Shown one piece after another: positions 1-42,970 of a stretch of DNA of 64,000 nt. Source of the stretch: Oopsacas minuta (Eukaryota; Animalia; Porifera); contig JAKMXF010000348.1 in assembly GCA_024704765.1 (NCBI GenBank), forward strand, positions 3,401-67,400, given 5' to 3'. The notes under the pieces are model-generated. The model made no database searches and was not told the origin of the DNA. It saw nothing but the letters and a program-made list of their open reading frames with translations. Numbering within the stretch: position 1 is the first letter of the stretch; the number at the start of each line of letters is the position of its first letter. A program made the translations under genes and the position numbers.

Positions 1-1419
1 GGAATAAACTGGTAATGATCAAGTAAAAGAGAAAAATCCAATAATAGAATACTTTGACGGTTGGGTAGGCGGCATACCTCCTGCCAGATTTTTCTAGATC
101 CGCCCCTGGGCCAAGTTTGCTCAAAATCAACCTGGCCAGAAATTGATGTAAATGTCTCTCTGTGTGGCCAAATTGTGTCTAAGTTTTTCATAGTACCTCG
201 GTTGAGAATCCCTGTTATAATATAAAATGCCGGGCCCAAATCTCAGCGGCTCGGACCATTATGGCATGACAGGCCCCTTTTGTCAACAAACTTTCAGTAC
301 ATAACTTCTTATGAAAATGGCTTGGAGTCTTGGACAGAGTAATAGAAAAATTGAAAAGCACAATTTCAGATAAGTATAATTTAAAAGTTGCTAGTACGTA
401 TGTGAAGTTCTAATCGAGGAACATTGGCAACGCAATTTGTACACCTGTGTTGTGAAAGTTTTTTTAATTAATTTCTGGGTACCGAATCCGATTCTGAAGT
501 CCAATGCATTTCGTCACGTAAACTCACAAAATTACTAAATTTCAGAAATAATTCTACTATAATGCAGTATGGATTTTGTATTAATATACAGAATACGCTA
601 ATCAGTGGCGGATAATCATTGAGACCAATAAGGCCGAAGTCTCTCGGCCCCAGAAGGATTATGAAATATCTATTTACTACGGATCCTTGTAATTTCAAGT
701 GTTCCCCTTATTTCCACGATGTGAAAAACTTGAAAATGTTATAGTCTGATTCAGAGTACTATGTTGCCCAGCATTTCGGATTCAGCATACTGAGTGACTG
801 TAAATATAGTTAGGCTCAGACCCGAGTGCAGTTAATCTGCCAATGACTCTAATGCGTTAAATCCAATATCCATGAATGAAATTGATTGTAAAAGATTCTT
901 TAATCAGTGGTGAATTATTCGACATATTTACAGATCAGATATTGAATTTTCGAATCATGATACCCTTCAAATTTCTTACATATCCTGAGAACATCAAATT
1001 GAAGCTCATCCTGGAATCATTCGCTATCTTTATTGTAGCCGAAAAATCTTGTGTTCTATTCTATATAAATTTTCAATGTAACAATATCTTTGCTGGTATA
1101 TCTCTAATTAAAACTGAATTATTTGAATTATACTCTAGTTTCTATGAATTCATATTCTATTGATGATTTATCTTAGGTATTACTCGTGTTATGAATTTTC
1201 AGATTGTGTGTTTTGAGAAATTATGGAAAATATTTCATTCTCACCAGTACATTTGTGGTTCTCAAAGGAATCATGAGTGTGGAGTACATGCAGATGAGGC
1301 AAATAGTCACGAATGAATATGTAAATATCTATGTAAGTACGTATAGTGAAATGATAGTATATTAACTATATTTGCGATTTGCATACTTAATTTCTCAGAT
1401 AGTATAACTCAAATTTCAA

Positions 1420-4117: not shown

Positions 4118-5263
4118 ATGTCAGTAATACTCGTAATATTAACTACTATACTGCTTATTGTATTCTTTGCGGTAAGTATTTACTGGACTTATGTTTTCGT
4201 GGTTAAAATATTTCTGTCAAAGAAATACATGAAGAGTGCTGCTAGAAACATCTCCGATGATGAATCAGGTTATATTTGTGAGCAATACTATTATCACTAT
4301 CAAACAGAAATAAGAAAATACATATTCTTACTTATGATTAACTTTATGGAGTTATTTGGTGCTGTTTCATATTATACACAAATGGTATTGCAGACCTACA
4401 AATATGATTCAAAACAAATAGCAAATAGCAGTATAGAAGTACATGTAGTGAATTGTGCAAATGTGAATAGCACTGTTTTGAGAGACAATCAGATTAGATC
4501 ATCTGCTATTCCATCAGTTACAATCTTCAGAGCATTTGGTAACGTGGCTGATATGTTTGTAGCAGGGTTGGGAGTTTGTCTGATGAGTTACTTGATAACC
4601 AGAATGAAGAATGGATCTATCCCGAATAACATCAAAATTACGAGGTTTATTATCATTTTATTGGTGACTAGTATTGTCATCATCTTAACTTCATATTTTA
4701 CATTCTACATTATCTTGAGTGGAGTGATATTTCTGCCTGTTTTAACCATTAATCTACTTTTATTCATAAAATATGTGAATAAATTTAAAGAAGCTCTCCT
4801 ACAGATAGCATTTGAGCGTCTCTCACAACACGGATCGAATAAGATAGAAATGAAACAATACAGATACTTCACATACAATATGTACTGTATTTGTATCGGA
4901 TTTTCCTTAATCACAATAAGTGCATATTCTGCGAATATTCCACGTTTCATATTGTCAGGTGTATTCTTCGGACATTGTTACTTCCCATTTAATCTTGTTT
5001 TCCCATCCAAGATGAAACTTCCATTTTCTGATCAATTTATGAATTATATCGATCTCATTGTTACTTACATACCATCAATAGAACATATAACAGCATTTTG
5101 TGGAGTAGTTATACTTATTTCCCCCTTTCTATTCATAACATTTTACACTTGGATCGTTATTCTATACCTAAAGACAAGAAGGAAATCTGACTTACAATTC
5201 AGATATCATGTGAACAGTAATAATGAAGAATCTATGTTGAAAGAAAATCTTTTGAAGAAATAA
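4118..5263 (+). CDS. orphan multi-pass (about 7 TM) membrane protein, intronless; paralog of 34151-35269 and 41278-42351
   Basis: 381-aa ORF with about 7 hydrophobic helices and motif YQTEIRKYIFLLMINFME, shared with the paralogs (AKTEYVKNIFLFLLNFVE; FQTESWKYLLLLF). Confidence 0.8.
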   Translation: MSVILVILTTILLIVFFAVSIYWTYVFVVKIFLSKKYMKSAARNISDDESGYICEQYYYHYQTEIRKYIFLLMINFMELFGAVSYYTQMVLQTYKYDSKQIANSSIEVHVVNCANVNSTVLRDNQIRSSAIPSVTIFRAFGNVADMFVAGLGVCLMSYLITRMKNGSIPNNIKITRFIIILLVTSIVIILTSYFTFYIILSGVIFLPVLTINLLLFIKYVNKFKEALLQIAFERLSQHGSNKIEMKQYRYFTYNMYCICIGFSLITISAYSANIPRFILSGVFFGHCYFPFNLVFPSKMKLPFSDQFMNYIDLIVTYIPSIEHITAFCGVVILISPFLFITFYTWIVILYLKTRRKSDLQFRYHVNSNNEESMLKENLLKK

Positions 5264-12587: not shown

Positions 12588-13395
12588 CATACACAGCAGG
12601 TTCTATTTGATTGAAGAATGGAGGATTTTTATGTTTTTTTGCTGTAAATCTTTGTAAATTTGTTTTGCAATTATTATTACTTTATCGTTCTTTATTTTCT
12701 CAATTCAAATGTAATTATTCTGACAGAAAAATGGGAAGTGATTGATGGAAACACATTAATAGTTATATTTAAAAGCATACTCTTATATACCATATACAGT
12801 GACTAGAATTCGAGACACGATATTCCGACTTAGTATTAATTAATGCAATGAAATTTGATCCTTCACGCAAGTGAATAAACTGACTTATCAATTCAATTGA
12901 TTCTTTATTCCATGCAAATAGGAATATTACAATATTCGGAACGATCATTGCTCTTTGTTAAACTCTAAAAACAATTATAGTAATCAAACAATGCATTTAT
13001 CGTTTTAGGGAAAATAATAGTAACCCATGAAGTAATACTCGCTGTACAACATTAGCACCGAGTTAGCCGCACCCGAAAAATTTAAGATTACTTTTCCTCC
13101 CTGGTTAAGCTGGATAATCAGCTCTCCTCAGTGGCCAATTTTGGTGATCGAATTTCTCATCCTCTAGTCCACTATTCACAATGTTTCCAACAGGATGTTT
13201 GTGAAGTGCTCATTAATGAGATTGAGCGCCGTCTCTTTATCAATTATACATCAACTTAGATTAATCCCTATGCATAGACTCCACATCTTAACGCAGCTAA
13301 ACGTTCTAAGCCTGTAAGGGTGGTTAACAAACTTATTCGAGAACACGCTGTCTATACGTATTCTGATTATATAACTTGTTTTGTATTTTATTAAG

Positions 13396-16300
13396 ATGAA
13401 TTGTAGCGGATGTAATAGAAAACTATTGTCATTAGATGACGTCTGTTTTTTCATGCTAAGTCCTAAAGAAATACATTTCATAGTCAAGACTGAACGTCAA
13501 ATATTCGCACAGGATAAGTTGAGGAGTGATTGGGATTCTAAAAGAGGCACTAAAGTAACATGTATGTTCTGTGACTATGTAGTAGGTAAGAATATCCCTA
13601 TTGGTCCGAATAACATGAATGTAATTGCGTTTGGAACAGAGAAAGTTCGTTTATTCAACCAACCAAAGACAAGAATTGATAAATGGCCGAATTTTTATAA
13701 TATCTCCCCTTACAATTCAATCGAACAACGAACAATGCAAAATTTCTTTTGTCGCAATTATTGTTCACATACGAATAAAATTCTTAATCTACAATCAGGC
13801 AACAAATGGAAAATACATTACCCAAATATTGACAATATACAAGAATTCAATTTTACTGACATTTTACTGTCAAATATTATACCAAGGGAATATCAAATAA
13901 CTTGCTATATAGAAGCATTACAACGTGATCTGGTTATAGTGCTACCTACAGGGTCTGGTAAGACATTAATCGCGTCATTAGTTGCCGGTAAAATGAAGCA
14001 ATTAAATCCAAACTACATGGTGTTGTTCATTGTAGATCGTATACCGTTAGTTTTTCAACAGGGTGAAGCGCTTCGGCTTGACACTCATTTAAATGTGTGT
14101 TGTCTGTGTAGCGAGACCAGGACAGAGTTTATACTTAGAAAATTACGAGAGGGACATTATGATATTCTCGTATCAACCGCTGGAGCCTTTCTTAACCTCA
14201 TGGACTGTAATGAACTGAGTATTAATGCGTTTTGTCTAGTTATATTGGATGAGTGCCATCATGCAACAGGACAGCATGATTATGTGAGAATACTTGAGAG
14301 AATAAAGGTATGTTCTCCTCAGTATAAACCAAGGATAATAGGATTAACTGCTTCCCCACTATCTGCTAAAACCGATCTCTCTACTACAGTAAAACTCCTG
14401 AATGATTTTAAACAGCTGTTTTCTAATGCTCCTATCTGTCACAATATTAATCTTGCTGGTTATAAATTCGCTAACCAAAAGATTGAACTTATTACAGTTC
14501 CTAATAACGACTGGGCATTTCAATCGTACACACAAGCACTGTTAGATGAAATGCATAATGTAGCTGACGTAATTAATTGTATACGAGGTGAGAATATTAT
14601 TAAGAAAGAACCATGGAATGAACCTTACTCTATGCTACGTTTAAAGAAAGCTTGTGCCATTATACTCAGATTCTTTGATAGGGGTTTGAATGAACAAGTT
14701 CAGCTAATGAAATGCTATATTTCTGCGTTAGAAATCGCAGAATTGGTTGGGGTTTCTTATGCGAATAAAGTTCTCAATAATACACCACTGTGTGGAAAGA
14801 TACAATCTAGCTCTATACTATCGCCGCGACTTAACAAACTCTTAAAATTACTCTTGGAATACCCCAGAACATCTAAAATCATAATATTCGTACACACCAG
14901 ACAAGCCGGTGAGATCTTAACACGAATTCTGCAGGACAACAATGAAATATCTGATCGATTCTCTCCTCTGAAAATATTCGGACATGGTGGAGTTCTAGGG
15001 ATGAGTTGGGATGAAGAACAAGCTGAAATAATACAAAATTTCCGAAGTGGGAATTGTAACCTACTTGTCAGTACTTCTGTATTAGAGGAGGGATTAGACG
15101 TACCAGCCTGTGACGTAGTTATAAGGTTTGATGGAATTAAATCTCTTATTTCATTCGCACAAAGCAAAGGACGAGCACGTAAACTTGAAAATAGTAAATT
15201 CGTATTGATTCTCTCTCCAAGACAGAAATTGAAATATGATGAAATAAAACAAAGAGAAATAGTACTGAAACAAGCTTTGAATCAAATTGATTCCAGAAAT
15301 GCTGTAATGATTCCATCTACGAAAACTCTGATTATACAAAACAAAATATCTTCAAATCAGAGAAATATAGAAATCCCAGAGTATTATTTCGCTAGATTTG
15401 AGTGTGCGATTGAATTCTACATTAGTGGTGTCCATGATCAGAACGACATATTAGAAGGTTTGAATTGTATTTTGAGTAATGAATGTTTCCTCACGATTAA
15501 ACGGATCGACGTTGTAGATGCTGATGCACTTTGGAAACAAAGAGGTATTTTTTCGAAAGAAGACTGTTTGATTATTTGTGGCGTTCGTTCTCGTGACGTA
15601 ATACAATCTTACCGTTTGTTGAGTACTAAATGGGATTTTTATATACAAAGTATTGAAGATCAGCCATTTGTATGGACAAAGCTTGAAATTCATACAAAGC
15701 AAAGTTTGAATAATTTTTGTACTTGGCCAGTATCGAGTATGCTATGGGGTTCATTTCTTGATAAAACAACTGTCTCTATAACAGAGAGATCTGCTACTGA
15801 CGCTTCGTTAAGAATTGTTCCTAAACACTCACTCATAATATCTTTACCAGAAAGCGAGATTGAAATTGAAATAAATTTTATTATAATTCATCATTTTTTA
15901 CTCGCTTCATGGCAAGATAAGTATGTTAGCCTATTTATACCATTGTCCAGCTGTCCTATCGTACGTATGAAAGATATAGATGATTTTACGACTAGATTGA
16001 CATGTGACAACTGTCAGATTCTAAAGGTATTTGCTCAACATCCTGTCCTAGCTGTTACCTTACCATATACTGCATCTAATTGGATACAACTTTGGTCTAC
16101 ATTACATAGCTCTAGCTTATTTCCAGTACCGTTATTTGACTCGAAGATCCAAATTATGGAAACAAATTTCTTTAACCCATTTATACCACCGCTGGTCGAT
16201 TCGAATTATTGTGATAGAAAGCAGACAGAAGACTGTCTATGGTTATTATCTGTATTAAAATGTACACGTAGTGTGTGTTTAACCCGACATACAATTGATA

Positions 16301-19300
16301 TGATATTTCTATTTATTTCTCAATCAAATTCTCTTCAAAACTTACTTGCTATATCAGTTACACTCTCGAAATTGATTACTTTGTGTTCTACAGCGACTAC
16401 AAACTATTTCTTTGATATTTTGGGCTATTTTAATACAGAAATGGAGAGTATTCAGGGATTAGAACTTCAAGTAATACAACCACCGATCAATTACCGTTCT
16501 ATTGAATATGCAATGGTGACTCCATCAACCGTAATATGTCATACTCCCATCACAGTACAGTGTAGTAGATTGTATAGGAATTTTCCTGATGTTCGTTTCT
16601 TATTAGTTGCATTCAGAGATGAACAGAATCAAATCCTTCACAATAGAGACGTGCTAGGACGTGTAAGAGAAGTTTTAGTGGAAGGATTCGAGATTAATGG
16701 AGATCGTTTCTATTTTCTGTTATCAAACCCGAGTCAATTGAGGGAACATCGTGCTGTTTTTATACAAATACTGGATAGAGATTCGCCTGTTTGTGTGCTT
16801 AATGAAATTCGTAGGAAAATTCTAGGCACGACAGTTATTCGTGATGAGATAAAGTTTTTATCTCGTCTAGGCCTATTCTCTACTTCAGACATTCCAATGC
16901 TCCAAATTCCACAGAGTTCTGTTGGAGAGATTAACGATATAAGAGCTGATAACAATCAACTTTTGACTGACGGGAGTGGAAAGATATGTTATAATCTAAG
17001 TCATGAAATTTCTGCGAAACTTGGTTTTACCTTCCAGCGCAATCTTTCAGCTCTCCAAATACGTTTAGCTGGTTACAAGGGTGTCTTAACAGTAGCCAAT
17101 AGAGATGATCCAGACTTTTCTAGCATTAACTTACGTAAATATAAGATACTTGTCCGGCCATCTATGAAAAAGATGGAATGGACAGATTCTAGTCTTAACA
17201 TTGTAAGTTTGCCTACCTACGAGCCTTTCTTTATTAACCTATCTTTCATTAATCTAATTTCCAGTTTGAGTGATCCTTTAAGTCAATGGAATCCTGAACC
17301 TGTTATCAGAGAATTACATACTAAAGCATTAATGGATTATGGTCAAATTTTGGCTGATACAAAGTTGGCTAATCAATCGCTATCAATGCATCTTTTGAAT
17401 TACTCAATGAATATCAGTGAATATTTCGATGTTAGAACAGAGCCTTATTTCTTATCGTTATTACGTTGTATCTACCGATTTAATGTAAATAATTTGGTTA
17501 CGAAAGCTCGTATTCCTCTTGATAACGGTGGTCTATTCATGGGTATACCAGATCCTATTGGTGTACTTGATGATGGAGAGATATTTATTCAATACGAGAG
17601 AGATGGTGAGTCAAATACACAAATAATTGAAGGCCCCGTTATATTGTACAAACACCCTTGCCTCCATCCAGGAGACCTACTGTCTCCTATCGCAGTAGAA
17701 AAGAGAGAGTTGATTCATCTTAAAAATGTAATCGTGTTTCCTATCCGAGGTAGGATATCTCTGCCTGCATCTACTAGCGGTGGTGACCTTGACGGAGATT
17801 TGTTTGCAGTTATTTGGGAATCTGGTCTAATTCCGCCTCAGTATTCACTACACCCAGCTTTGAACTATGAAGAAATAGCTGAAAAAGGACATGCACTACA
17901 ACTAACGCTACAAGAACAGAAAATCCCATTATTAGAAGACAATGATAATACACAACAGAGACTGTCTACTGCATATTGTCGTGTTATTTCTAATGATTCA
18001 CTCGGGAAAATAGCTAATCTACATCTAGCGTTATGTGACCAGTTAGAAGATGGAGCTTGTAATCCATTAGCTATATCTGTTGCAGAATCACAGTCGATAG
18101 CTGTAGACTATCCTAAAACAGGCGTGGCACCTGTGATACCACAAGAAGCTGTTGGAATGTTGAGAGATAAAGGTTTTCCAGACTTCATGGAGAAAGACGG
18201 AGCGCAGTCTTATCCATCTACAAAACTATTAGGTGAACTGTATCGTAGTGCTAAGTCAGTATGTTACGCTGGAGAAGAAAATCCCTCCCATATTCATAGC
18301 ACAGTTGATATTAATAGAAATCCATTACATGACATTTCCACCCACTATCTCTATGTACCAGGTAGTGAGTGCTATATTGACGAAGCAAGAGCTACGTATA
18401 GCATATACGCCAATGCCATGCAACAAATAATGACGTCATTCGGGCTCGAAACTGAGGCAGAGACTGTGCTGGGCTTAATCATAAAATGTCATCCAATGTT
18501 ATCAGCTGATAAGAGAAAAACTAAGAAAGCATTGAACGCAGTCATACAAGCACTTTTTGAACAATTCCGTGATATTTTCTTCCAAGGAATTTCTACAAGA
18601 GATTCTATTGAATGTTCTAAGAAGGTATTTGCTTGGTATTACATCACTCACGCTCAGAGTTATGATACTATGGTTTTCTACTCATTTCCTTGGATAATGA
18701 ATGAATATTTATGTAATATTTCTAGTAAAAAGAGAAGATTTGAGTCTGAATCAAATGCTATTCTTGGTAGAACTGCTAGGGAATATCTCTCCAAAAACTC
18801 TGACTATATCAGAACGAATGTAGAATCTAAACTATCCACTTTCCCAATGGTCGAATCTTCCATCAGAAACTACATTGCTTCAACAATTACTAATAATCCA
18901 TACAGTGTTCCTATATTTAATATAACTTGTTTCGGTTCTGTTTCACTCTTCCTTTGTGAACCACAATCTGATTTAGATATCTCCGTCAACCCAACGCCCC
19001 TTTGTTATAACTATATATTCCCTTCCCCAGCTGACAGACAGGAATTTGAATTATTAAACATACACAAACAGATAAAACATATTCTAATGACTTTAGTATC
19101 ACCTGCAATTGATAGTATTTCCCATAGTAAGATGGAGAAATACACTGCACAAGTTCCTATAATCGCTATTACAGTCGATTCCCCATTAGACGCGAATAAT
19201 CAAGTTGATATTGATATTACTATTGGAAGTGATGGAGTACAGAAATGCGAGTATATAATGCAACTATACTGTGAGACAGGTGGCGTATTCTATGGTTGGC

Positions 19301-21189
19301 TTTGGATTTTAGTACACTGGGCTAGACATGTGGGAATATTGAAGTGTCAAACTTCAGTTGAGAATACTGGGATTATTGTAACAGCTGAGTTTGAGGCTCT
19401 AGCATTGTATATCTACGATAAGATGTCCAATAAGTCCCAGGATAATTGTATTCAAATGAGTGAGCTATCATGCAGTTTCCTACTGGACAAATTAATGAGA
19501 TCTGATATTGACTCAATATTGGGTTCAATGCTGGTGGAATTCTTCTGGCTTGGGATGAAGCTAACCTCCAAACAAGATTCCATTGTTTATGAATGGCCAA
19601 TTGAAGGTAAGCCAACACACACAATAGATGGGACTAATTTGAAGAAAATATCCTTTTTACTGTTTCAAGCCTGGCACTGTATAGTGTACACACGTGACTT
19701 AGCCAAGATATTCGAGCGAAATGATATACCATTAAAACTGAATAAACGCCTGTCATATAAAGTTAGCAATCGTATCAGAGCTTCTTGTCATTTCCATGAA
19801 TTACGTCTAACATCACTGACAGGCGCAATTATACATATTGAGGATTTGGGTAGACATGTGTTGATAACATCTCAAGGATCTGCCAGCTCTATCCATAAGC
19901 TCTCCATCGAATTAGCCAAACTAGAGAAAATTACTTCACTCACGAAAAAATACGCATTTAATGCGAATAAATACATCCTAGAAGATAGCTTTATTATAAT
20001 CTTCGTCAATCAATCATATAATATTCGAGTTAAACTTTTCCCCTTCACAAGTGCTTGTTTCAAGTTGTATGACACTCACAATGAACGTAGTCATGTAGTC
20101 TATGCATGTGAGACGGTAGATACTGCCTGGAAGCAGCAAGCTATTTCTAGATTGCAGTTTTTACTATTGGATCAGCTGGCCAAATTTCCTGTTACTAACA
20201 AGAAACTATTGGGAAGACTCAGATTTAAAACTCGATTTGGGTTTTTCTATGTTTTAGGTTCGAATGATTCTTTTCAATTATATGGTAATTGTATGTATTT
20301 ACAGGATTTTGAGCATTATTTGAAAAAGTCGTTACGATACAGGCGACAAATTTTTCGCGAATTCTTACCAATTAAAACTACTGATGATAATGAAAATTCT
20401 CTAGATAAAAAAACAACTCTATCTTCATTTCGTAATTCAGAAGAAACGCTTAGAGAAACTGTGGAGAAGAAAAGGAAGAATTATCCAAGTTGTTCATTCT
20501 GTCCAGGACTTCAAGAAATTACAAACTCTAATGATTACAACGTTTGTCAATCTATTTACACAACTGCTCTTGAACAGTGCGGGTTTATTACTTGTGAACA
20601 ATCAAAATCTTACACATGGATGATGGATATAAGAGTTACGAAGAGTTTTGACATTAGAATTAAACTAGATGATAGAATGAATATTTTTGCTATCAACGAG
20701 CGTCCGTTAGTATGGATGGTAGCAACTATAATAGCAGATAGGAATGTAGCTGATAAAGATGATAAGTTACATGACATCAGACTACGAATGGATACGACTG
20801 AGGATGTAGATCCTGGTTCTAACTTGTATAAATTTGTTTTTCCGAACGGCATTAAAGGCCCATTACTTACTGTCGGTCTGGATGGTATTCCAATTCCTTG
20901 TGGTGATTTAAAAGGCCGCTTGAAGATCATACGTCATAAAGTAAGATATATTTACTATAAACGAGGTTCTGTTATAGCTAAGATTACTATTGGTACTGAG
21001 TATAGCGGGAAAATGTCTCAATTCGGTAGGAAATTCTGTGAATTGTCATTATTGAATAATGAACATGAGTTAAGACAGGCTGTTGCAGGTGGGAATAATA
21101 GCAATGATATATTGAGAATAGCTGAAAATGCTGTGAATATATCGCTGGAAATATCCAAGGCTTTGGTAGCTAATCAATCACATTTGTAA
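13396..21189 (+). CDS. multidomain RNAi-type protein: RLR-CTD-like Zn domain + RIG-I/Dicer-type DExD/H helicase + RDR-type RdRP + Cid1/TUTase-like nucleotidyltransferase + KH-like segment + unknown C-terminal domain; single exon, about 2597 aa
   Basis: First ATG at 13396 (the ORF track starts at an upstream TTG). Helicase motifs PREYQ (13882), LPTGSGKT (about 13942-13965), DECHH (14248), GLTASP (14341), STSVLEEGLDV (about 15070), QSKGRAR (15160). RdRP motifs TDGSGKI, QIRLAGYKG, RPSMKK, KHPCLHPGD, GGDLDGD (DLDGD 17785-17799), AVDYPKTG. NTase motifs FGS (18931)...SDLDI (Asp 18970, 18976), VPII, IDIT (Asp 19213), VHWAR, LGSMLVEFF. Confidence 0.95.
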   Translation: MNCSGCNRKLLSLDDVCFFMLSPKEIHFIVKTERQIFAQDKLRSDWDSKRGTKVTCMFCDYVVGKNIPIGPNNMNVIAFGTEKVRLFNQPKTRIDKWPNFYNISPYNSIEQRTMQNFFCRNYCSHTNKILNLQSGNKWKIHYPNIDNIQEFNFTDILLSNIIPREYQITCYIEALQRDLVIVLPTGSGKTLIASLVAGKMKQLNPNYMVLFIVDRIPLVFQQGEALRLDTHLNVCCLCSETRTEFILRKLREGHYDILVSTAGAFLNLMDCNELSINAFCLVILDECHHATGQHDYVRILERIKVCSPQYKPRIIGLTASPLSAKTDLSTTVKLLNDFKQLFSNAPICHNINLAGYKFANQKIELITVPNNDWAFQSYTQALLDEMHNVADVINCIRGENIIKKEPWNEPYSMLRLKKACAIILRFFDRGLNEQVQLMKCYISALEIAELVGVSYANKVLNNTPLCGKIQSSSILSPRLNKLLKLLLEYPRTSKIIIFVHTRQAGEILTRILQDNNEISDRFSPLKIFGHGGVLGMSWDEEQAEIIQNFRSGNCNLLVSTSVLEEGLDVPACDVVIRFDGIKSLISFAQSKGRARKLENSKFVLILSPRQKLKYDEIKQREIVLKQALNQIDSRNAVMIPSTKTLIIQNKISSNQRNIEIPEYYFARFECAIEFYISGVHDQNDILEGLNCILSNECFLTIKRIDVVDADALWKQRGIFSKEDCLIICGVRSRDVIQSYRLLSTKWDFYIQSIEDQPFVWTKLEIHTKQSLNNFCTWPVSSMLWGSFLDKTTVSITERSATDASLRIVPKHSLIISLPESEIEIEINFIIIHHFLLASWQDKYVSLFIPLSSCPIVRMKDIDDFTTRLTCDNCQILKVFAQHPVLAVTLPYTASNWIQLWSTLHSSSLFPVPLFDSKIQIMETNFFNPFIPPLVDSNYCDRKQTEDCLWLLSVLKCTRSVCLTRHTIDMIFLFISQSNSLQNLLAISVTLSKLITLCSTATTNYFFDILGYFNTEMESIQGLELQVIQPPINYRSIEYAMVTPSTVICHTPITVQCSRLYRNFPDVRFLLVAFRDEQNQILHNRDVLGRVREVLVEGFEINGDRFYFLLSNPSQLREHRAVFIQILDRDSPVCVLNEIRRKILGTTVIRDEIKFLSRLGLFSTSDIPMLQIPQSSVGEINDIRADNNQLLTDGSGKICYNLSHEISAKLGFTFQRNLSALQIRLAGYKGVLTVANRDDPDFSSINLRKYKILVRPSMKKMEWTDSSLNIVSLPTYEPFFINLSFINLISSLSDPLSQWNPEPVIRELHTKALMDYGQILADTKLANQSLSMHLLNYSMNISEYFDVRTEPYFLSLLRCIYRFNVNNLVTKARIPLDNGGLFMGIPDPIGVLDDGEIFIQYERDGESNTQIIEGPVILYKHPCLHPGDLLSPIAVEKRELIHLKNVIVFPIRGRISLPASTSGGDLDGDLFAVIWESGLIPPQYSLHPALNYEEIAEKGHALQLTLQEQKIPLLEDNDNTQQRLSTAYCRVISNDSLGKIANLHLALCDQLEDGACNPLAISVAESQSIAVDYPKTGVAPVIPQEAVGMLRDKGFPDFMEKDGAQSYPSTKLLGELYRSAKSVCYAGEENPSHIHSTVDINRNPLHDISTHYLYVPGSECYIDEARATYSIYANAMQQIMTSFGLETEAETVLGLIIKCHPMLSADKRKTKKALNAVIQALFEQFRDIFFQGISTRDSIECSKKVFAWYYITHAQSYDTMVFYSFPWIMNEYLCNISSKKRRFESESNAILGRTAREYLSKNSDYIRTNVESKLSTFPMVESSIRNYIASTITNNPYSVPIFNITCFGSVSLFLCEPQSDLDISVNPTPLCYNYIFPSPADRQEFELLNIHKQIKHILMTLVSPAIDSISHSKMEKYTAQVPIIAITVDSPLDANNQVDIDITIGSDGVQKCEYIMQLYCETGGVFYGWLWILVHWARHVGILKCQTSVENTGIIVTAEFEALALYIYDKMSNKSQDNCIQMSELSCSFLLDKLMRSDIDSILGSMLVEFFWLGMKLTSKQDSIVYEWPIEGKPTHTIDGTNLKKISFLLFQAWHCIVYTRDLAKIFERNDIPLKLNKRLSYKVSNRIRASCHFHELRLTSLTGAIIHIEDLGRHVLITSQGSASSIHKLSIELAKLEKITSLTKKYAFNANKYILEDSFIIIFVNQSYNIRVKLFPFTSACFKLYDTHNERSHVVYACETVDTAWKQQAISRLQFLLLDQLAKFPVTNKKLLGRLRFKTRFGFFYVLGSNDSFQLYGNCMYLQDFEHYLKKSLRYRRQIFREFLPIKTTDDNENSLDKKTTLSSFRNSEETLRETVEKKRKNYPSCSFCPGLQEITNSNDYNVCQSIYTTALEQCGFITCEQSKSYTWMMDIRVTKSFDIRIKLDDRMNIFAINERPLVWMVATIIADRNVADKDDKLHDIRLRMDTTEDVDPGSNLYKFVFPNGIKGPLLTVGLDGIPIPCGDLKGRLKIIRHKVRYIYYKRGSVIAKITIGTEYSGKMSQFGRKFCELSLLNNEHELRQAVAGGNNSNDILRIAENAVNISLEISKALVANQSHL

Positions 21190-22027
21190 TTACTCATTAA
21201 CTTATATTTGTATTGTTTACTGATCATTTATATAATTTTCTATGTATTTAGTTTCATTTGTTTATGTTTTTGTTTTGGTTCATGTATATTAATATTTCTT
21301 TGTTTAATGTAGGAATATATATCTATATAGTAGACTCCGCTTATTATTGTCACATCGGATAAGGAAAATACTTCAAAAGAACAACTTTTATTTACAAACA
21401 AAGTTTAAAGTAACTAGTCATTTGTTGTAATTAATACTATCGCGTTTCTCTTTGTCGCGCTGCGCGGCTTGCGAACATTTTGTGTTTGCATGGGCCAGGT
21501 ACTTCGTGTCTCGAGTTGAGCAAAGTATAAAGTAGCAATATATTCACAATACCTTGGTGGTAAATTCATATTAGTAATCAGCGTTCCAGATTACCCCAGT
21601 ATAACGGTTGATAGCAAGTTTCTAGGATTAATTAGAAAATAGTTTACTTTATATTCATGAAAACAATAAATAATTTACATAAAAAGAAACTTGAATATGC
21701 GAAGTTCGGATTTAATGTACTTGATTAGCCCGATATGTCAGTTGAGAACAAGTCTGAGTATATTTCGAGATATCAACAATTTGTTCACTTTAATTCATAA
21801 AACAACAATAAATTTACATATGATTAATTCCAAAGTGTGAAATAAAAAATCAACATACTCGATTATCCCAATGTAATTGTTTACTTTTCTTATATCGTCA
21901 ACAGAAGGATATGTTATTCCCTATATTATATACGCAGATCATCTTCCCCAGTTATTACAATACAAAGTGGACAAACAAATAAACACAAACACACACCCCA
22001 CAATATTTGAGTTTTAATAATATATTT

Positions 22028-31753: not shown

Positions 31754-32983
31754 ATGGCAGAACGCTACACAATTGCCCCTCAACTTGCAGACCCCATAGA
31801 GACATACATAAACTATACCATTGATGGTCTCATAGGGCTTCTGAATGTCCGCAGAGCTCAACTGTTAGAGCAAGTCCGCAACTTACGAGAGGAAAAGCGA
31901 GGAGCAGAGATAGCTCGAGATCAAATGATAGCACAATTGACTGAGGCACGGGCACAACTCCAAGGAACATTAAGAGAAAACCCCCTTCAGTCCATGCAAG
32001 AGAGAATGGTAGACCAAATTCAGGAGAAATTGCAAGACTTGCGAAATAACATCCCCTCAGAAACGCAATTAAAGTTGCAGTGCGACACACGTGAACTAGA
32101 ATTTAGAATTTCCAGTCTCGGAGAGATTAAACAGGTATTTGTAGGTGTACCAAATTACGCTGCATTACTAAGGTCCATGGTAGCTACAGGGGAGAAAGGT
32201 CGCGGTCCTGGTGAATTGGATTGGCCACGCGGTGTAGCTATTCACGAAGCAACTAATCAAATATTCGTAGCTAATTGTGGCAATGACAGAGTTGAGATAT
32301 ACTCTGGTACAGGAGAGTACCTCAATCAGCTAGGCTTAGGACAGCCAAAACAACCTTATGGGATAGCTATTCATGGAGAGAATGTATATGTTAGCAGCTG
32401 GGAACAAGACACTGTGAGCAAATTCACACTAACTGAATTGCGAATTGTAAGAGAGATAGGAGGCAAAGGGTTCAACAACGGTCAATTCAACTGTCCTAGA
32501 CAATTAACCACGGATCCACTTGGTTGTGTGTTCATAGCAGATGAGATGAATAACCGAATCAGTGTACATGACAAAGAGCTTAACCATCTACGCAACATAA
32601 AGCACCAGTCTATGTCACAACCTTTTGATGTTAAAGTCTCGCGAGACCGCGTCTACATACTGACTCCAGAAAACAACCCATGTATACACGTACTAACCCT
32701 AGAGGGAGACAAGTTGTACTCTCTAATTACCTGTGGGTTAGGATTGGATGTGTTAAATCCTCTATTCTTTTGTCTAGATCCAATTGACAACTTTATTGTT
32801 AGCGATCTCGGCACTAATTCAATACGGGTGTTCTCCCCTGAAGGTAATAACCTACATACGATAGGAACAGATGGACATCAACAAGGAATGTTCCATCTGC
32901 CCCGAGGAATCGCTATAACTCAAAGTGGGGGTTTGGTTTCGGTGTCACATAATGAGAACTTTGGTCTACAAATATTTTATTAG
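31754..32983 (+). CDS. coiled-coil + NHL beta-propeller protein (TRIM2/3/71-like C-terminus, no RING or B-box), intronless
   Basis: NHL repeats LDWPRGVAI, PYGIAI, FNCPRQLTTD, QPFDVKV, FHLPRGIAI after an N-terminal coiled coil. Confidence 0.88.
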   Translation: MAERYTIAPQLADPIETYINYTIDGLIGLLNVRRAQLLEQVRNLREEKRGAEIARDQMIAQLTEARAQLQGTLRENPLQSMQERMVDQIQEKLQDLRNNIPSETQLKLQCDTRELEFRISSLGEIKQVFVGVPNYAALLRSMVATGEKGRGPGELDWPRGVAIHEATNQIFVANCGNDRVEIYSGTGEYLNQLGLGQPKQPYGIAIHGENVYVSSWEQDTVSKFTLTELRIVREIGGKGFNNGQFNCPRQLTTDPLGCVFIADEMNNRISVHDKELNHLRNIKHQSMSQPFDVKVSRDRVYILTPENNPCIHVLTLEGDKLYSLITCGLGLDVLNPLFFCLDPIDNFIVSDLGTNSIRVFSPEGNNLHTIGTDGHQQGMFHLPRGIAITQSGGLVSVSHNENFGLQIFY

Positions 32984-34150
32984 TAATTTATTGCAATAAT
33001 TTATCGCTTTATGTCTCATTGATACTTTAACCAGGGGACACATGAAAGCCTTACTACTTATCCAGATTACTGAAAGAATATTCATTCAAATATATTAAAC
33101 TGTAACTAACTACAGAAAACCTATAATTTCTGGAAGTCTCGTCCGGGGGCTGCCCGGATATCAGAAATAACAATAACCCTATGAGAGATCCAATTTGTAT
33201 ATGATCTATAATATTGAGATACATTTGTATTGTTGAATCTAGAAGTTTTAACGGTTTGTGGTAAGGTTCGACTGTATAGAAAGTGTATGTGTAGTTATGT
33301 ACTATTCTTCTGAATTATATATTAATAATACACCGATTGACTGATCATATTTCTTTGCAAAAAGATTATGCAACAAATCCTGTGTTTACTCGTGTTCATC
33401 AAGCTCAGGGCTTAGATGGCTTGGGAAATCAGAATATTTTGCGAGTGGGGTTAAAAAGGCATCAGTATAGTCGTTGAAAGTATGAACTATCACAAAAATG
33501 TTTGCAATACCATACTAGGACTCAGTTTACACGATTAACTCAGTATAGTCTTTGAAAGCATGATAATATCTCAAAATTGAACATTTATACTTTATATACA
33601 AATTGAAATTATATACTATACACACAAAAGTACAAATATTCACAATAAGTTGTTCACAATACCATATTAGGACTCAGAATATTCGTTTGCTTAGTATTTT
33701 GGCTTAAAAAATAGAGCAAGGTTTAAATATATGGAGCAATTTCCAGGATGACAATAATTCCCTATAAGTGGATACATTCCTTACAATTTGCTTATAGAAT
33801 TAATAATCTCAATGGTAAATCATTTGCCCTCGTATTTCAATATTAGTAGATAGTTATTTGCCAGTGGGATATTTAAAATGAGTGGCCCAATACATTATAT
33901 CATGAAATACATGAATTTCTTATATCATCATAGAAATAGATGTAATCTATATGGTGATTGCATAGGATAGTTTATAGTAATCAATTAAATGAATATGTGA
34001 ATAGAATATTACATCAAACAGCACAAGTATATATTACAATTACCTCAAAACATCATTATTCAATCAGTAGTTAGATTTGTATGAGAAAAATCCAAAATAA
34101 GGCAAATTTGGATAATTATATAAACCTGATATCTATAATTCTGAAAAGAA

Positions 34151-35269
34151 ATGTTGCAGTTGGGGACAGTAGTATATTTGTTTATTTTAGGGCTAATGTC
34201 TCTGCTAACGACAATAGTATTCTGTTTTTGGTTTGTGTATTTACTAGAAGCAATCAGAAGTAAATTGAAGTTTTACAAACACTGTATTGAACAAGGAATA
34301 GATGACAGCCAACAGCAAATATTAACATACAATGCAAAAACTGAATATGTGAAGAATATTTTCTTGTTTTTGTTGAATTTTGTTGAGTGGATAGCGTTTA
34401 TTTTCGCGAGGATAGGACACATTCTTTATTTCACACAAGAAAACCATCAAAAGAATGAATTGTATACAGACTCAGGAAATGGATCTGTACATGCTAGCTA
34501 TGGTGTGCTCTTCATAGCCCAGGGTGAGGTTCAATTGAACTATTCATTCGCATATAGTTTTCTTTTTCTGCCCAATACATTTGTTGTCTTAAGTCTGGTA
34601 CTGATAGCCAGTCTGTGTATGTATCTAGCATCACGACAAGCTGACAAAAGTTGGATAAAATCCACTTCAATTCCTTATCTAATCGGATTCTTCCTTATTT
34701 GCGCTATGCTCAATCAAATCATAGCATCTTTCTGTGTAGTGCATATCATTGCACATTGGATTAGCATAATATTAACAACGGTACCATTTATAATCGCATT
34801 CCAACAATACAAAAAACTTAATATGGTGATCAATTGGTCAATTGTTGACTTAAGTATTAGTAAAAATAGTGTTTTATTAAAGAAACAGAAAATAATGAAG
34901 GAAAGGTTCACCAAAATATTCATATTCATCTGGATTGGATTTGTATCGTTAATACTATGTGAATTTCTGCAAACTATCTACGATACATTAATTATAGCTT
35001 TACGCACTAATCGCGACGAATATTTCTTCCTTTCACTCTGTCAAAATCCAGAATTTCCTAATTCAGAAATTGATACCCTCCTTACAGTCGTTTTCATCAC
35101 AAAATTCACCTTTGGATTCATAGGCATGTCCTTTATATTCATTCCATACATTGCCTATGGACTTTCAACAATGTATGTGATAGCGTGGAGATTATGGAAA
35201 GGAAAGACTGGCTACAAAACCAATTTTCATAATCCACTGTATACCCCTCTCGTACAAACACATGTGTAG
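34151..35269 (+). CDS. orphan multi-pass (about 7 TM) membrane protein, intronless
   Basis: 372-aa ORF with about 7 TM helices and motif YNAKTEYVKNIFLFLLNFVE, shared with 4118-5263. Confidence 0.8.
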   Translation: MLQLGTVVYLFILGLMSLLTTIVFCFWFVYLLEAIRSKLKFYKHCIEQGIDDSQQQILTYNAKTEYVKNIFLFLLNFVEWIAFIFARIGHILYFTQENHQKNELYTDSGNGSVHASYGVLFIAQGEVQLNYSFAYSFLFLPNTFVVLSLVLIASLCMYLASRQADKSWIKSTSIPYLIGFFLICAMLNQIIASFCVVHIIAHWISIILTTVPFIIAFQQYKKLNMVINWSIVDLSISKNSVLLKKQKIMKERFTKIFIFIWIGFVSLILCEFLQTIYDTLIIALRTNRDEYFFLSLCQNPEFPNSEIDTLLTVVFITKFTFGFIGMSFIFIPYIAYGLSTMYVIAWRLWKGKTGYKTNFHNPLYTPLVQTHV

Positions 35270-36027
35270 AACTTTTGTAATTTTATTGAATTTTTATTTG
35301 TCCCGTGAGTATATTATTTACTTAAACAAATAAAAGTAATTTGGTTTAAACTTCGTATAACTAACCTTACAGCTATTTTCGTGCTGGCACATTACATTGT
35401 GAAGTGTAAAACTATGCTAATTTTGAACTATTGAAAGATCCTGATGCCAATTTGAAGTCTCAAACTCCGTGAGAATATTCATGAGATTTTGAAAATCCGT
35501 GAGAATTGGCATCTCTAACTATATGAAACTGATAATGACGAGTAGACAGGTAATATAATTGTCTGCATTAATCAAGTATATTCAATATATTTTGTATAGT
35601 ATTGGTTTACTAATTGATTAGATTATGTGACTAACACGAGAGGCTTTTATTAATAAGTAATTATAGTCATATAATGGGTAGGAATATAAACAATTTTTAT
35701 ACTTTCACAAACTTTACATTTTGATGAATGTTTTCTGATTGAAATCTTGTACTAAGAGCACTAAACTATGGCAATATGCTAGCAATACTCTTATATATAC
35801 ACGTGTAAACTAGAGAATGAAACTACTATTTCTCCTATGTAATTCAGACTCCTAAAACTAGATCATCGCTCTTCAATATGTTGTAACACATCATACGGCT
35901 TTAAATGCTATAATTTTTTAGTTAAGTCGTAGAATTTCAAATCCTTCATAGATTCAATGTATTAATTATTTATTCAATGAATATTCTCTATTCATTTATA
36001 ATTTTGAAACCTTTCAGCATCTAAGAA

Positions 36028-40061: not shown

Positions 40062-40200
40062 TAGATTTCTATTAGATAGTTACTTACAAATCAGAATTGT
40101 ATAAGTTGGACATGAAACAGAGTGAATAATTTTGTTTTGCAGGGGTTTATAACATGACGGAAACGGGTGTATAAAGCTCATCATATATAATGCAACTTTG

Positions 40201-40596
40201 TAGAGGGCATTAGCATCATGATCAATTCTTGACGATCTGAGGATGATCGCCGATCATTTTATAAGCAGTGATCGAATGGAAGATCGGATCATTTTCCCAG
40301 AAAATTTTATCTTATTTTCGATCTTTTAGGCAGACAGAATTTGAAAAATTGACAATCTAGACCCCAAAATGTATATCAAATATAGAGTAAATGTACTAAT
40401 TTTCATGACAATCAATCTTATAGATTTCGCACGTAATAGAGCATCTCCCTATAGGAAGTGCTTATAAATTTCAAAAAGTTGATCGTGAACGTAATTGCGA
40501 TCATTTTTGGGTCAAGGATGGGGATCAAGATCTCCGAACATTTTTAATAACGGATCGTGATCGCGATAATAAATTTGATGACCGTCTAATGCCCGA
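40201..40596. mobile_element. hAT-type MITE
   Basis: GGGCATTAG / CTAATGCCC termini with an 8-bp duplication CAACTTTG at 40193-40200 and 40597-40604. A partial copy lies at about 25579-25720. Confidence 0.72.
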
Positions 40597-42902: not shown

Positions 42903-42970
42903 CAGTCAACTCCGCTTAATCGGGACAAAAGGCCTGGAACAGATGTGTCCCGATTAAGCGGAGTTGACTG
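42903..42970. mobile_element. 68-bp Tc1/mariner-type MITE
   Basis: Perfect 25-bp TIR CAGTCAACTCCGCTTAATCGGGACA, 18-bp spacer, TA on both sides. Confidence 0.85.

What the first reader, a model, noticed from the sequence alone, without database searches (positions are those of the whole stretch)
13396..21189. All-in-one RNAi amplification machine: RIG-I-like sensor/helicase + RdRP + terminal nucleotidyltransferase in one ORF
Seen: one uninterrupted ORF of about 2597 aa carries complete helicase motifs (GSGKT, DECH, TAS, QSKGRAR), a cellular RdRP with intact DLDGD, and a Pol-beta-family NTase with GS/DxD/D. Established: these activities usually work as separate subunits. Examples are S. pombe RDRC (Rdp1 + Hrr1 helicase + Cid12 poly(A) polymerase), Tetrahymena Rdr1 with Rdn nucleotidyltransferases, and C. 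elegans EGO-1/RRF-1 with DRH-3, plus RDE-3/MUT-2 tailing that marks RdRP templates. Helicase-RdRP fusions are known (Dictyostelium Rrp proteins). I do not know of a described fusion that also includes the tailing enzyme and an RLR-type CTD. Inference: the protein may bind dsRNA or 5'-ppp RNA, tail 3' ends and copy them itself, as a self-contained antiviral or anti-transposon amplifier in an animal lineage.
Basis: partly seen in the sequence, partly recalled or inferred. Interest (0 to 1): 0.95.

Follow-up and report, generated by a model that had tools for sequence, protein, structure and literature searches.

The report
Sponge helicase-RdRP-tailing enzyme fusion gene
This sponge gene really does encode one 2597-residue protein that joins an RNA-unwinding motor, an RNA-copying polymerase, an RNA-tailing enzyme and two modules of the kind that recognise RNA ends, but it belongs to an old family found across eukaryotes and is not an animal invention.

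Summary
Window 13396-21189 (+) is one intact ORF of 2597 codons. It carries complete RLR/Dicer-type helicase motifs, a cellular RdRP with DLDGD, and a Cid1/PAP-type nucleotidyltransferase whose GS/DxD/D residues are invariant in 30 homologues.

Two more modules were found. One is an N-terminal four-cysteine zinc module closest to RLR C-terminal domains. The other is a C-terminal tunnel domain. Its predicted fold matches RESC1/RESC2 (a 5'-triphosphate RNA-binding pair) and the Cet1 RNA triphosphatase, but it lacks Cet1's ExE metal motif.

The fusion is not a misjoin and not lineage-specific. Co-linear full-length relatives occur in Oopsacas, Hydra, Hydractinia, acoels, dinoflagellates, diplonemids, a liverwort, an oomycete (Plasmopara RDR1) and a chytrid.

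The helicase-RdRP part is published for Dictyostelium, oomycetes, Hydra and Nematostella. The PAP domain is noted once, in a figure legend. The tunnel and zinc modules appear undescribed.

This scan had already followed up at least three paralogues in the same genome (s1-261134, s1-226612, s1-215763) with the same conclusion.

Function as a single-chain RDRC-like amplifier is inferred, not shown. Transcription could not be tested.

Verdict: a real gene and a new member of a known but biochemically unstudied family. Interest is moderate.

The parts
13396..21189 (+). Complete single-exon CDS, 2597 aa plus stop
   Evidence: Co-linear at 100% coverage with 30+ homologues. No joints or indels in laid contigs.
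13396..13740 (+). N-terminal zinc beta-tent module (aa 1-115), closest to RLR/DRH C-terminal domains
   Evidence: C3, C6, C56, C59 and W97 are invariant in 23 sequences from animals to an oomycete. The profile hits the DRH-3 CTD 6m6r at E 0.003 and the LGP2 CTD over its full length at E about 0.5. Pfam RIG-I_C-RD matches 9/23 members (best 4.8e-5) and Yippee matches 17/23. This copy alone matches only Yippee at E 0.014.
13873..15309 (+). RLR/Dicer-type DExH helicase (aa 160-638)
   Evidence: The span 160-638 aligns as a whole to RLR helicase cores. The Hel2i-type helical insertion and the pincer helix are my reading of the model's helices at about 373-460 and 608-634. Pfam. PDB sequence hits AncD1D2, Dicer, LGP2 and MDA5. 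Predicted fold Z 38-40 to LGP2/RIG-I/MDA5 over residues 160-638. Motifs I, II, III and VI are invariant.
15388..16515 (+). Linker region (aa 665-1040): a beta-alpha-beta-beta-alpha unit (669-745, RRM/ferredoxin-like by topology only), a beta-rich domain and a helical domain
   Evidence: Secondary structure of model med1b4827d3bd, not identified by fold search. 10 of the 20 non-synonymous allele differences fall in aa 651-989, that is 11 minus the I651L change that lies before this part, so this region is the least constrained.
16516..18747 (+). Cellular RNA-dependent RNA polymerase (aa 1041-1784) with DLDGD at 1464-1468
   Evidence: Pfam RdRP E 4.8e-114. Arabidopsis RDR2 and another solved plant RdRP (7w84) align to aa 1085-1784 at E about 1e-55. 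DLDGD is invariant.
18748..19737 (+). Non-canonical poly(A)/poly(U) polymerase-type nucleotidyltransferase (aa 1785-2114), catalytic plus central domain
   Evidence: Model residues 1-335 match RET2, TUT4, Cid1, PAP, GLD-2 and URT1 at Z 16-18. G1847, S1848, D1859, D1861, D1940, K1950, R1977 and K1983 are invariant. Pfam MTPAP-like_central scores 22 bits here and 50 bits (above cut-off) in the Riccia homologue.
19738..19965 (+). Small alpha/beta unit between the NTase and the tunnel domain (aa 2115-2190)
   Evidence: DSSP of model m2a9309f9fd0e. Canonical PAP alignments extend into it, up to model residue about 380, so it is possibly equivalent to the PAP C-terminal RNA-binding domain. Not tested further.
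19966..21186 (+). Triphosphate-tunnel (TTM) fold domain (aa 2191-2597), RESC1/RESC2-like and Cet1-like
   Evidence: Z 22.9 to RESC2 (8cdp_B), Z 21 to chain 1 of the RESC-A entries 8fn4 and 8fn6, and Z 16.9 to Cet1, all over model 412-818. Cet1, CTL1 and SLS1 appear in AFDB Swiss-Prot. No Pfam match in 10 members. The strand placed where Cet1's ExE motif should be reads FKTRFG, with no conserved acid pair. R2280, R2462, R2464, K2529, R2545 and E2549 are conserved.

Best explanation
The ORF is a genuine, intact, intron-free gene of a sponge. The sponge is probably a hexactinellid, judged from the nearest named relatives.

The gene encodes a full-length member of the ancient eukaryotic helicase-RdRP family, the family of oomycete RDR1 and of the Hydra-type RdRPs (the literature also places Dictyostelium Rrp in it). 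From N to C it contains:
- a Zn beta-tent module like the end-recognising C-terminal domain of RIG-I-like receptors;
- an RLR/Dicer-type DExH translocase;
- a less constrained linker;
- a cellular RdRP;
- a Cid1/Trf4/GLD-2-type terminal nucleotidyltransferase with an intact active site;
- a triphosphate-tunnel domain that has lost the metal-binding ExE motif and so probably binds, rather than hydrolyses, a 5'-triphosphate RNA end, as RESC2 does.

Inferred mechanism: one polypeptide does the jobs that RDRC-type complexes split among subunits. Comparable complexes are S. pombe Rdp1-Hrr1-Cid12, Tetrahymena Rdr1-Rdn, and C. elegans RdRP with DRH-3, RDE-3 and PIR-1. The end-recognition modules and the helicase would select and thread an RNA. 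The NTase would add an untemplated 3' tail to the template or the product. The RdRP would synthesise the complementary strand de novo. The tunnel would hold the 5'-ppp end of the product or template.

Shown here: the gene, its domains, its catalytic residues and their conservation. Inferred: every biochemical step and the biological role in silencing of transposons and/or viruses.

The confidence given (0.7) is for the whole statement. Gene identity and domain architecture alone are about 0.9; the inferred mechanism is about 0.5.
For: The ORF and all motifs are intact. Pfam and PDB sequence matches cover the helicase and RdRP.

34 full-length relatives were found, 30 of them co-linear at 99-100% coverage and 27-71% identity. 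All catalytic motifs, including the NTase triad, are invariant in the 30 aligned.

Predicted folds: helicase Z 38-40 to RLRs, NTase Z about 17 to ncPAP/TUTases, tunnel domain Z 21-23 to RESC1/2 and 16.9 to Cet1. N-terminal module.

The same architecture is present in Prorocentrum, Diplonema and Riccia. The C-terminal profile finds 271 clusters, including long proteins from Hydra, acoels, dinoflagellates, diplonemids, a liverwort, Plasmopara RDR1 and a chytrid.

An allele in run X4 differs by 37 substitutions (17 synonymous, 20 non-synonymous) and no indels, giving dN/dS about 0.32. There are no flanking repeats.

RESC2 binds a 5'-ppp in its tunnel, and RESC1/2 lack two of Cet1's three glutamates (PMC10201420). 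Relatives in Dictyostelium are genetically required for siRNA spreading and DIRS-1 silencing (titles and abstracts of PMC3661229 and PMC3950715).
Against: - No transcript evidence: the four runs that hold the locus are of unknown kind and from one sample, possibly the sample the window was assembled from, and no RNA-Seq run was listed.
- The NTase is below Pfam's cut-off in this copy.
- The N-terminal module matches Yippee and MsrB about as well as RLR CTDs at the sequence level, and its fold was not searched on its own.
- Loss of the ExE motif was placed from alignment ranges and a KFG-like pattern, not from a residue-level superposition.
- No activity of any family member's NTase or tunnel domain has been measured, as far as the searched literature shows.
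- Nematostella has RdRPs but showed no secondary siRNA amplification (PMC12768352), so RdRP presence does not guarantee amplification. Whether those RdRPs belong to this family was not tested here; PMC4791657 reports a helicase-RdRP in Nematostella.
Confidence: 0.7

Rival explanations
1. The protein is a diversified innate-immune sensor-effector rather than a housekeeping silencing enzyme. Glass sponges have expanded this gene into many paralogues at about 40% identity. Each paralogue could be an RLR-like receptor for foreign RNA ends that converts the bound viral RNA directly into dsRNA or siRNA precursors. This overlaps with the best explanation and differs in the biological role.
For: At least 16 distinct sponge paralogues form one clade, with Oopsacas copies interleaved. 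Further paralogous loci in this same genome are noted by the scan. The helicase is closest in fold to LGP2, RIG-I and MDA5, and the N-terminal module is closest to DRH-3 and LGP2 CTDs. Nematostella RdRPs are reported as induced by poly(I:C) (PMC12768352).
Against: All catalytic and many surface positions are strongly conserved among paralogues (mean column identity about 50%), with no obvious hypervariable recognition surface tested. No expression or infection data exist for sponges. Family relatives in Dictyostelium act on transposons.
Confidence: 0.25
2. The NTase, like the tunnel domain, is a non-catalytic scaffold or RNA-binding pseudoenzyme, comparable to DZF domains or Drosophila inactive Trf4-2. 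On this view the protein is functionally only a helicase-RdRP.
For: The Pfam score is below cut-off in this copy. Identity to solved NTases is only 11-18%. The neighbouring tunnel domain has evidently lost catalytic residues.
Against: The full GS...DxD...D triad, plus K1950, R1977 and K1983, is invariant in 30 sequences down to 23-28% identity. The Riccia homologue passes Pfam's cut-off for MTPAP-like_central and NTP_transf_2. Pseudoenzymes normally lose these aspartates.
Confidence: 0.12
3. The long ORF is an artefact or a non-host element: an assembly misjoin of separate genes, a decaying retrocopy, or cargo of a transposon or virus.
For: The gene is intron-free and multi-copy. One database relative (P0035) carries a reverse-transcriptase domain. 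A PiggyBac-type transposase ORF lies 31 kb downstream.
Against: The architecture is co-linear in 30+ proteins from many phyla. Contigs of four runs cross all junctions without joints or indels. dN/dS is about 0.32 and the frame is kept in a second allele. There are no direct or inverted repeats around the gene. Neighbouring ORFs are ordinary animal domains. Hexactinellid genes are intron-poor anyway, at 1.59 introns per gene in Oopsacas (PMC10280926).
Confidence: 0.03

Closest known systems
Helicase-RdRP fusion family: Dictyostelium RrpA/B/C, oomycete RDR1, Hydra and Nematostella RDRs (Martens 2002, as cited in PMC4791657)
   Same: Same family. There is an N-terminal Dicer/RLR-type helicase followed by PF05183 RdRP, at about 2300-2700 aa. 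Plasmopara halstedii RDR1 and Hydra proteins are hit by the C-terminal NTase/tunnel profile and sit in the same tree.
   Different: The literature describes only the helicase, Helicase_C and RdRP domains. The NTase is mentioned once in a legend for two amoebozoan proteins (bioRxiv 10.1101/2023.10.19.562841). The tunnel domain and the N-terminal zinc module were not found described in the papers searched. Dictyostelium sequences themselves were not examined here. One subgroup of about 2320-2360 aa (unnamed proteins that came up with the Hydra query) matches only the first two thirds of the C-terminal profile, so it appears to lack the tunnel domain.
RDRC-type complexes: S. pombe Rdp1-Hrr1-Cid12; Tetrahymena Rdr1-Rdn1/2; C. 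elegans EGO-1/RRF-1 with DRH-3, RDE-3 and PIR-1 (established knowledge, not tested here)
   Same: The same set of activities is present: RdRP, helicase and a non-canonical nucleotidyltransferase. In C. elegans the helicase is an RLR-type one with a CTD, and there is also a 5'-triphosphate-handling factor.
   Different: Here everything is in one chain. The helicase is DExH RLR-type rather than the SF1 Hrr1 type. The 5'-ppp module is a tunnel fold rather than the cysteine-phosphatase fold of PIR-1, and it probably binds rather than hydrolyses.
RIG-I-like receptors and Dicer-related helicases (RIG-I, MDA5, LGP2, DRH-1/3)
   Same: The helicase core matches at Z 38-40 and 21-25% identity; a Hel2i-type insertion and pincer helix are read from the model's helices. 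There is also a four-cysteine zinc beta-tent module.
   Different: The zinc module is N-terminal to the helicase, not C-terminal. There are no CARDs. The protein is fused to polymerases. Membership of the zinc module in PF11648 is not established for this copy.
RESC1/RESC2 (kinetoplastid guide-RNA 5'-triphosphate binder) and Cet1-type RNA triphosphatases (TTM superfamily)
   Same: Predicted tunnel fold with Z 22.9 to RESC2 (8cdp_B), 21 to chain 1 of 8fn4/8fn6 and 16.9 to Cet1. Conserved arginines and lysines lie on barrel strands. As in RESC1/2, the Cet1 glutamate pair is absent (PMC10201420).
   Different: There is no detectable sequence similarity. The domain is one part of a 2597-aa protein rather than a heterodimer. 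Binding of 5'-ppp RNA is untested.

Membership tests
Cellular RdRP (Pfam PF05183) | Full-length match to the RdRP model and the catalytic DxDGD loop | tested here: met
   382.6 bits against a cut-off of 23.8, model positions 1-581 of 582. DLDGD at 1464-1468 is invariant in 30 sequences. RDR2 aligns at E 1.6e-55.
RLR/Dicer-type SF2 helicase | Motifs I, II (DECH), III and VI, plus a Hel2i insertion and pincer between or after the RecA domains | tested here: met
   Motifs are present and invariant. Predicted structure aligns over 160-638 to LGP2, RIG-I and MDA5 at Z 38-40, rmsd about 3.2 A, 456-470 residues. Hel2i and pincer are inferred from that full-span match and the model's helices, not mapped residue by residue.
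RLR C-terminal domain (Pfam PF11648, beta-tent fold) | Four zinc-binding cysteines in two CxxC pairs about 50 residues apart, and a match to the family model | tested here: inconclusive
   The cysteines are invariant. The profile hits the DRH-3 CTD at E 0.003 and the LGP2 CTD over its full length at E 0.5. PF11648 is hit by 9/23 members (best 4.8e-5) but not by this copy, and Yippee is hit by 17/23. The fold was not searched separately, and the position is N-terminal.
Non-canonical poly(A)/poly(U) polymerases (Cid1/Trf4/GLD-2; Pol-beta NTase superfamily) | hG[GS] followed by DxD, plus a third carboxylate on the palm; two-domain catalytic and central fold | tested here: met
   GS1847-8, D1859, D1861 and D1940 are invariant. 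Z 16-18 over model 1-335 to TUT4, Cid1, PAP, GLD-2 and URT1. The Pfam score is sub-threshold here (22.1 vs 27) and above threshold in the Riccia homologue (50.2).
Metal-dependent RNA triphosphatases (Cet1-type TTM) | Tunnel fold | tested here: met
   Predicted model only: Z 16.9 to Cet1 1d8h with 229 residues aligned. Cet1 and CTL1 also appear in AFDB Swiss-Prot.
Metal-dependent RNA triphosphatases (Cet1-type TTM) | Three metal-binding glutamates (Cet1 E305, E307, E496; PMC10201420) | tested here: not met
   The strand at the position expected for motif A reads FKTRFG in nearly all 30 sequences, with no acid pair. Only one invariant Glu (E2549, FCELSL) sits on the late strand. The position was inferred from the alignment range 464..816 vs 275..539, not from a residue-level superposition. 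The protein is therefore not filed as an active triphosphatase.
Helicase-RdRP family (Rrp / oomycete RDR1 / Hydra RDR) | Co-linear full-length homology to described members | tested here: met
   Hydra proteins align at 100% coverage and 31% identity. The cluster holding Plasmopara halstedii RDR1 is hit by the C-terminal profile at E 7e-18 and placed in the tree. Dictyostelium proteins were not examined directly.

The most novel reading that the evidence does not exclude
The five-module architecture (end-recognition zinc module, RLR-type helicase, RdRP, tailing enzyme, 5'-triphosphate tunnel) is the ancestral, LECA-era single-chain form of the RdRP complex. On this reading, the separate-subunit RDRCs of yeast, ciliates and nematodes would be later split versions. 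The sequence-orphan kinetoplastid RESC1/RESC2 guide-RNA binders would descend from its C-terminal tunnel domain. In support, full-length members exist in diplonemids, which established phylogeny (not tested here) places next to kinetoplastids, and the tunnel domain resembles RESC1/2 more than Cet1. In glass sponges the family would additionally have radiated into a repertoire of foreign-RNA receptors with built-in amplification.
Probability: 0.2. Interest if true: 0.8.

Novelty: new member of a known kind. Interest (0 to 1): 0.5.

Why it matters
Gene fusions of this kind are strong evidence that the fused activities work together. This family puts an RdRP, an RLR-type helicase with an end-recognition module, a terminal transferase and a 5'-triphosphate-type pocket on one chain. 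It does so across most eukaryotic supergroups.

That supports the view that tailing and 5'-end handling are intrinsic to RdRP-based silencing and not add-ons specific to worms or yeast. It also supplies testable residues, namely the NTase aspartates and the tunnel arginines, in tractable relatives such as Dictyostelium, Hydra and oomycetes.

It gives a possible evolutionary source for RESC1/RESC2, which the authors of their structure found to have no sequence relatives outside kinetoplastids.

For this particular locus the value is mainly as one more intact member. It represents the earliest-branching subgroup of a large glass-sponge expansion.

Tried and rejected
- RNA evidence. The look-up of sequencing runs returned four runs of unknown kind from one sample and a fifth low-share run. 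Laid contigs include a 107-kb record, so at least one run is DNA-like, and they cannot show transcription. A second search restricted to RNA-Seq listed none.
- Sequence-level identification of the C-terminal half. The profile against PDB gave only marginal CutA, Cid1 and MEAT1 hits (E 0.09-0.8). Pfam found nothing for the last 400 residues in 10 family members. Only the predicted structure identified the tunnel fold.
- Fold search of the N-terminal model.
- Transposon hypothesis. There are no direct or inverted repeats of 25 nt or more within 10.5-24 kb.
- Nematostella. A search for named Nematostella members with the Hydra C-terminus found hydrozoans only.
- Dictyostelium. The Rrp proteins did not appear in the AFDB Swiss-Prot search, and their NTase content was not verified directly.
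- Nucleotide specificity of the NTase (A versus U). It was not assessed because no residue-level structural alignment was available.
Full report
**The observation**

The window has a single open frame from 13381 to 21189 on the + strand. The first ATG is at 13396, five codons after the preceding stop. Homologues begin with the same M-N-C-x-x-C residues, so the start is well placed.

- GSGKT at 186-190, DECH at 285-288, TAS at 318-320, QSKGRAR at 589-595;
- DLDGD at 1464-1468;
- for the nucleotidyltransferase, GS at 1847-1848, DLD at 1859-1861 and D1940.

Pfam recognises ResIII/DEAD (163-321), Helicase_C (479-594) and RdRP (1041-1618, E 4.8e-114). It gives only a sub-threshold hit to MTPAP-like_central at 1834-1946 (22.1 bits against a cut-off of 27). 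By sequence, solved plant RdRPs (RDR2 and 7w84) align to 1085-1784. The helicase is closest to Dicer, LGP2 and MDA5.

**Is it one real gene?**

A search of 5.8 billion proteins returned 34 full-length relatives at 27-71% identity, 30 of them co-linear at 99-100% query coverage. They include three Oopsacas minuta (glass sponge) proteins and a Hydra vulgaris protein. In a 30-sequence alignment every catalytic motif of all three enzymes is invariant.

Contigs from four public runs cross 15300-21299 with no joints and no insertions or deletions. All four runs come from one sample, their kind is not on record, and the sample may be the assembly's own. One run carries a second allele with 37 substitutions. 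I classified them as 17 synonymous and 20 non-synonymous, giving dN/dS of about 0.32. Eleven of the non-synonymous changes fall in the aa 651-989 linker.

There are no repeats flanking the gene. The neighbouring ORFs carry ordinary animal domains: RUN, NHL, ankyrin and IBR. Glass-sponge genes are intron-poor in general (PMC10280926), so an intron-free 7.8-kb gene is not suspicious. Misjoin, pseudogene and transposon cargo are therefore very unlikely.

**Domain anatomy from predicted structures**

The C-terminal 818 residues were folded with 30 homologues (mean pLDDT 79).
- Model residues 1-335 (protein 1780-2114) match terminal uridylyl and poly(A) polymerases at Z 16-18. The matches include RET2, TUT4, Cid1, yeast and mammalian PAP, GLD-2 and URT1.
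- Model residues 412-818 (protein 2191-2597) match the RESC1-RESC2 guide-RNA-binding pair at Z 21-23 and the yeast RNA triphosphatase Cet1 at Z 16.9.
- AlphaFold Swiss-Prot hits agree. Cet1 orthologues, CTL1 and SLS1 match the tunnel part. GLD-4, HESO1, TENT4A/B and Cid1/11/13 match the NTase.
- No Pfam model matches the last 400 residues in any of ten family members, so this domain is visible only by structure.

The RESC paper (PMC10201420) states that Cet1 needs E305, E307 and E496 for its metal, and that RESC1/2 lack two of the three. It also shows that RESC2 holds the 5'-triphosphate nucleoside of guide RNA in the tunnel through lysines and arginines.

In the present family, the strand at the position expected for the ExE pair reads FKTRFG in almost all members. 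A single invariant glutamate (E2549) remains on a late strand. R2280, R2462, R2464, K2529 and R2545 are conserved on barrel strands. I therefore read the domain as a probable 5'-triphosphate binder, not a hydrolase. The residue equivalences were placed from alignment ranges, not from a superposition.

The N-terminal 1045 residues were also folded (pLDDT 81.5). Residues 160-638 superpose on LGP2, RIG-I and MDA5 at Z 38-40 and 21-25% identity. From that full-span match and the model's helices I infer that the helical Hel2i insertion and the pincer are included.

The first 115 residues carry four invariant cysteines (C3, C6, C56, C59) and an invariant tryptophan. These hold in 23 sequences from sponges to an oomycete. 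A profile of this segment hits the C-terminal domain of C. elegans DRH-3 (E 0.003). It aligns over the whole LGP2 C-terminal domain (E about 0.5). It also hits MsrB and Yippee, which I recall as belonging to the same beta-tent fold as RLR CTDs. Pfam RIG-I_C-RD is matched by 9 of 23 members and Yippee by 17.

Its assignment is supported only at the profile level.

Residues 665-1040 contain a beta-alpha-beta-beta-alpha unit, a beta-rich domain and helices. I could not identify these further.

**Distribution**

A profile of the NTase-plus-tunnel half was searched against 1.84 billion representatives. It found 271 clusters at E up to 1e-3, and many of them carry the module at the end of 2000-2900-residue proteins. 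Named members come from:
- Hydra;
- the acoels Convolutriloba and Symsagittifera;
- the dinoflagellates Prorocentrum, Effrenium and Polarella;
- the diplonemids Diplonema and Sulcionema;
- the liverwort Riccia;
- the oomycete Plasmopara (annotated RDR1);
- a chytrid.

Pfam on the Prorocentrum, Diplonema and Riccia proteins shows the same order of helicase, RdRP and MTPAP-like domains. The Riccia NTase scores above the curated cut-off. Hydractinia also has a full-length member. A subgroup of about 2320-2360 residues, unnamed proteins found with the Hydra query, appears to lack the tunnel domain.

In a maximum-likelihood tree the sponge sequences form one clade with full support. The window's protein and its three closest relatives are sister to all other sponge paralogues, among which the Oopsacas copies are interleaved. 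The expansion therefore predates the split of those sponges. Deep branches are long and the relations among supergroups are unresolved.

**Literature**

Helicase-RdRP fusions are described for Dictyostelium, peronosporalean oomycetes, Hydra and Nematostella, with only the helicase and RdRP domains drawn (PMC4791657). A preprint on amoebozoan microRNAs notes in a legend that two RdRPs contain a PAP nucleotidyltransferase domain (10.1101/2023.10.19.562841). I found no paper that describes the tunnel domain or the N-terminal zinc module, or that tests the NTase.

Dictyostelium RrpC is required for siRNA spreading and DIRS-1 silencing (PMC3661229 and PMC3950715, from their titles and abstracts). 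Nematostella RdRPs are induced by a dsRNA mimic, yet no secondary siRNAs were detected there (PMC12768352).

**Earlier notes of this scan**

Three follow-ups on paralogous loci of the same genome (s1-261134, s1-226612, s1-215763) reached the same conclusion: a genuine helicase-RdRP-tailing fusion, extra end-recognition modules, and an old eukaryotic family. I re-derived each of these points independently here. The same genome is also noted to hold RdRPs fused to Upf1/ZNFX1-type helicases (s1-230912 and others), which I did not examine.

**Interpretation**

The protein unites in one chain the activities that RDRC-type complexes distribute over subunits. What is shown is the architecture, the intact active sites and their conservation under purifying selection.

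What is inferred is the mechanism:
- end recognition and threading by the zinc module and helicase;
- 3' tailing by the NTase;
- de novo copying by the RdRP;
- retention of a 5'-triphosphate end by the tunnel.

The biological target, whether transposons, viruses or both, is open. The sponge-specific radiation makes an immune role worth testing. Transcription of this copy remains untested, because no RNA-Seq run was listed.

**Verdict**

This is a new member of a known family whose full architecture is under-described and biochemically unstudied. It is not unique to animals and not new to this scan. Interest is moderate.

Noticed in passing
window 19966-21186 (aa 2191-2597): The tunnel domain resembles RESC1/RESC2 (Z 21-23) more than Cet1 (Z 16.9). 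The authors of the RESC1-RESC2 structure found no sequence relatives for them outside kinetoplastids. Full-length family members exist in the diplonemids Diplonema and Sulcionema, which established phylogeny places next to kinetoplastids. RESC1/2 might therefore derive from this RdRP-associated domain.
   Followed up: partly
AFDB Swiss-Prot hits to model residues 268-812: The best Swiss-Prot structural matches to the C-terminal part are yeast mitochondrial SLS1 (P42900) and S. pombe C582.04c (Q10338), ahead of Cet1. These poorly understood proteins may share the same tunnel-containing module.
   Followed up: no
window 52837-54264 (+): A 475-aa ORF with a full-length PiggyBac-type transposase domain (DDE_Tnp_1_7, E 2.9e-53). 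It is preceded by a 206-aa ORF at 52214-52834 with no Pfam family match.
   Followed up: no
window 31754-45654 (+): A run of same-strand ORFs with NHL repeats (31754-32983), ankyrin repeats (38016-40061) and an IBR half-RING domain (44776-45654). These are possibly exons or genes of TRIM/RBR-like ubiquitin-ligase type. The ORFs at 4118-5263, 34151-35269 and 55019-56272 have no Pfam match.
   Followed up: no
P0043, P0046, P0051, P0217-P0223: A subgroup of unnamed proteins of about 2320-2360 aa, found with the Hydra query, keeps the helicase, RdRP and NTase. It matches only the first two thirds of the C-terminal profile, so the tunnel domain seems to have been lost or replaced there.
   Followed up: partly
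P0035: One database relative of 1529 aa carries a reverse-transcriptase domain (PF00078) together with the helicase and RdRP domains. This could be a chimeric gene call or a retroelement insertion.
   Followed up: no
same genome, other pieces: The scan's notes list other RdRP fusions in this genome with Upf1/ZNFX1-type SF1 helicases and a NadR/AAA_28 P-loop domain. The sponge therefore seems to hold at least two different single-chain RdRP-helicase designs.
   Followed up: no
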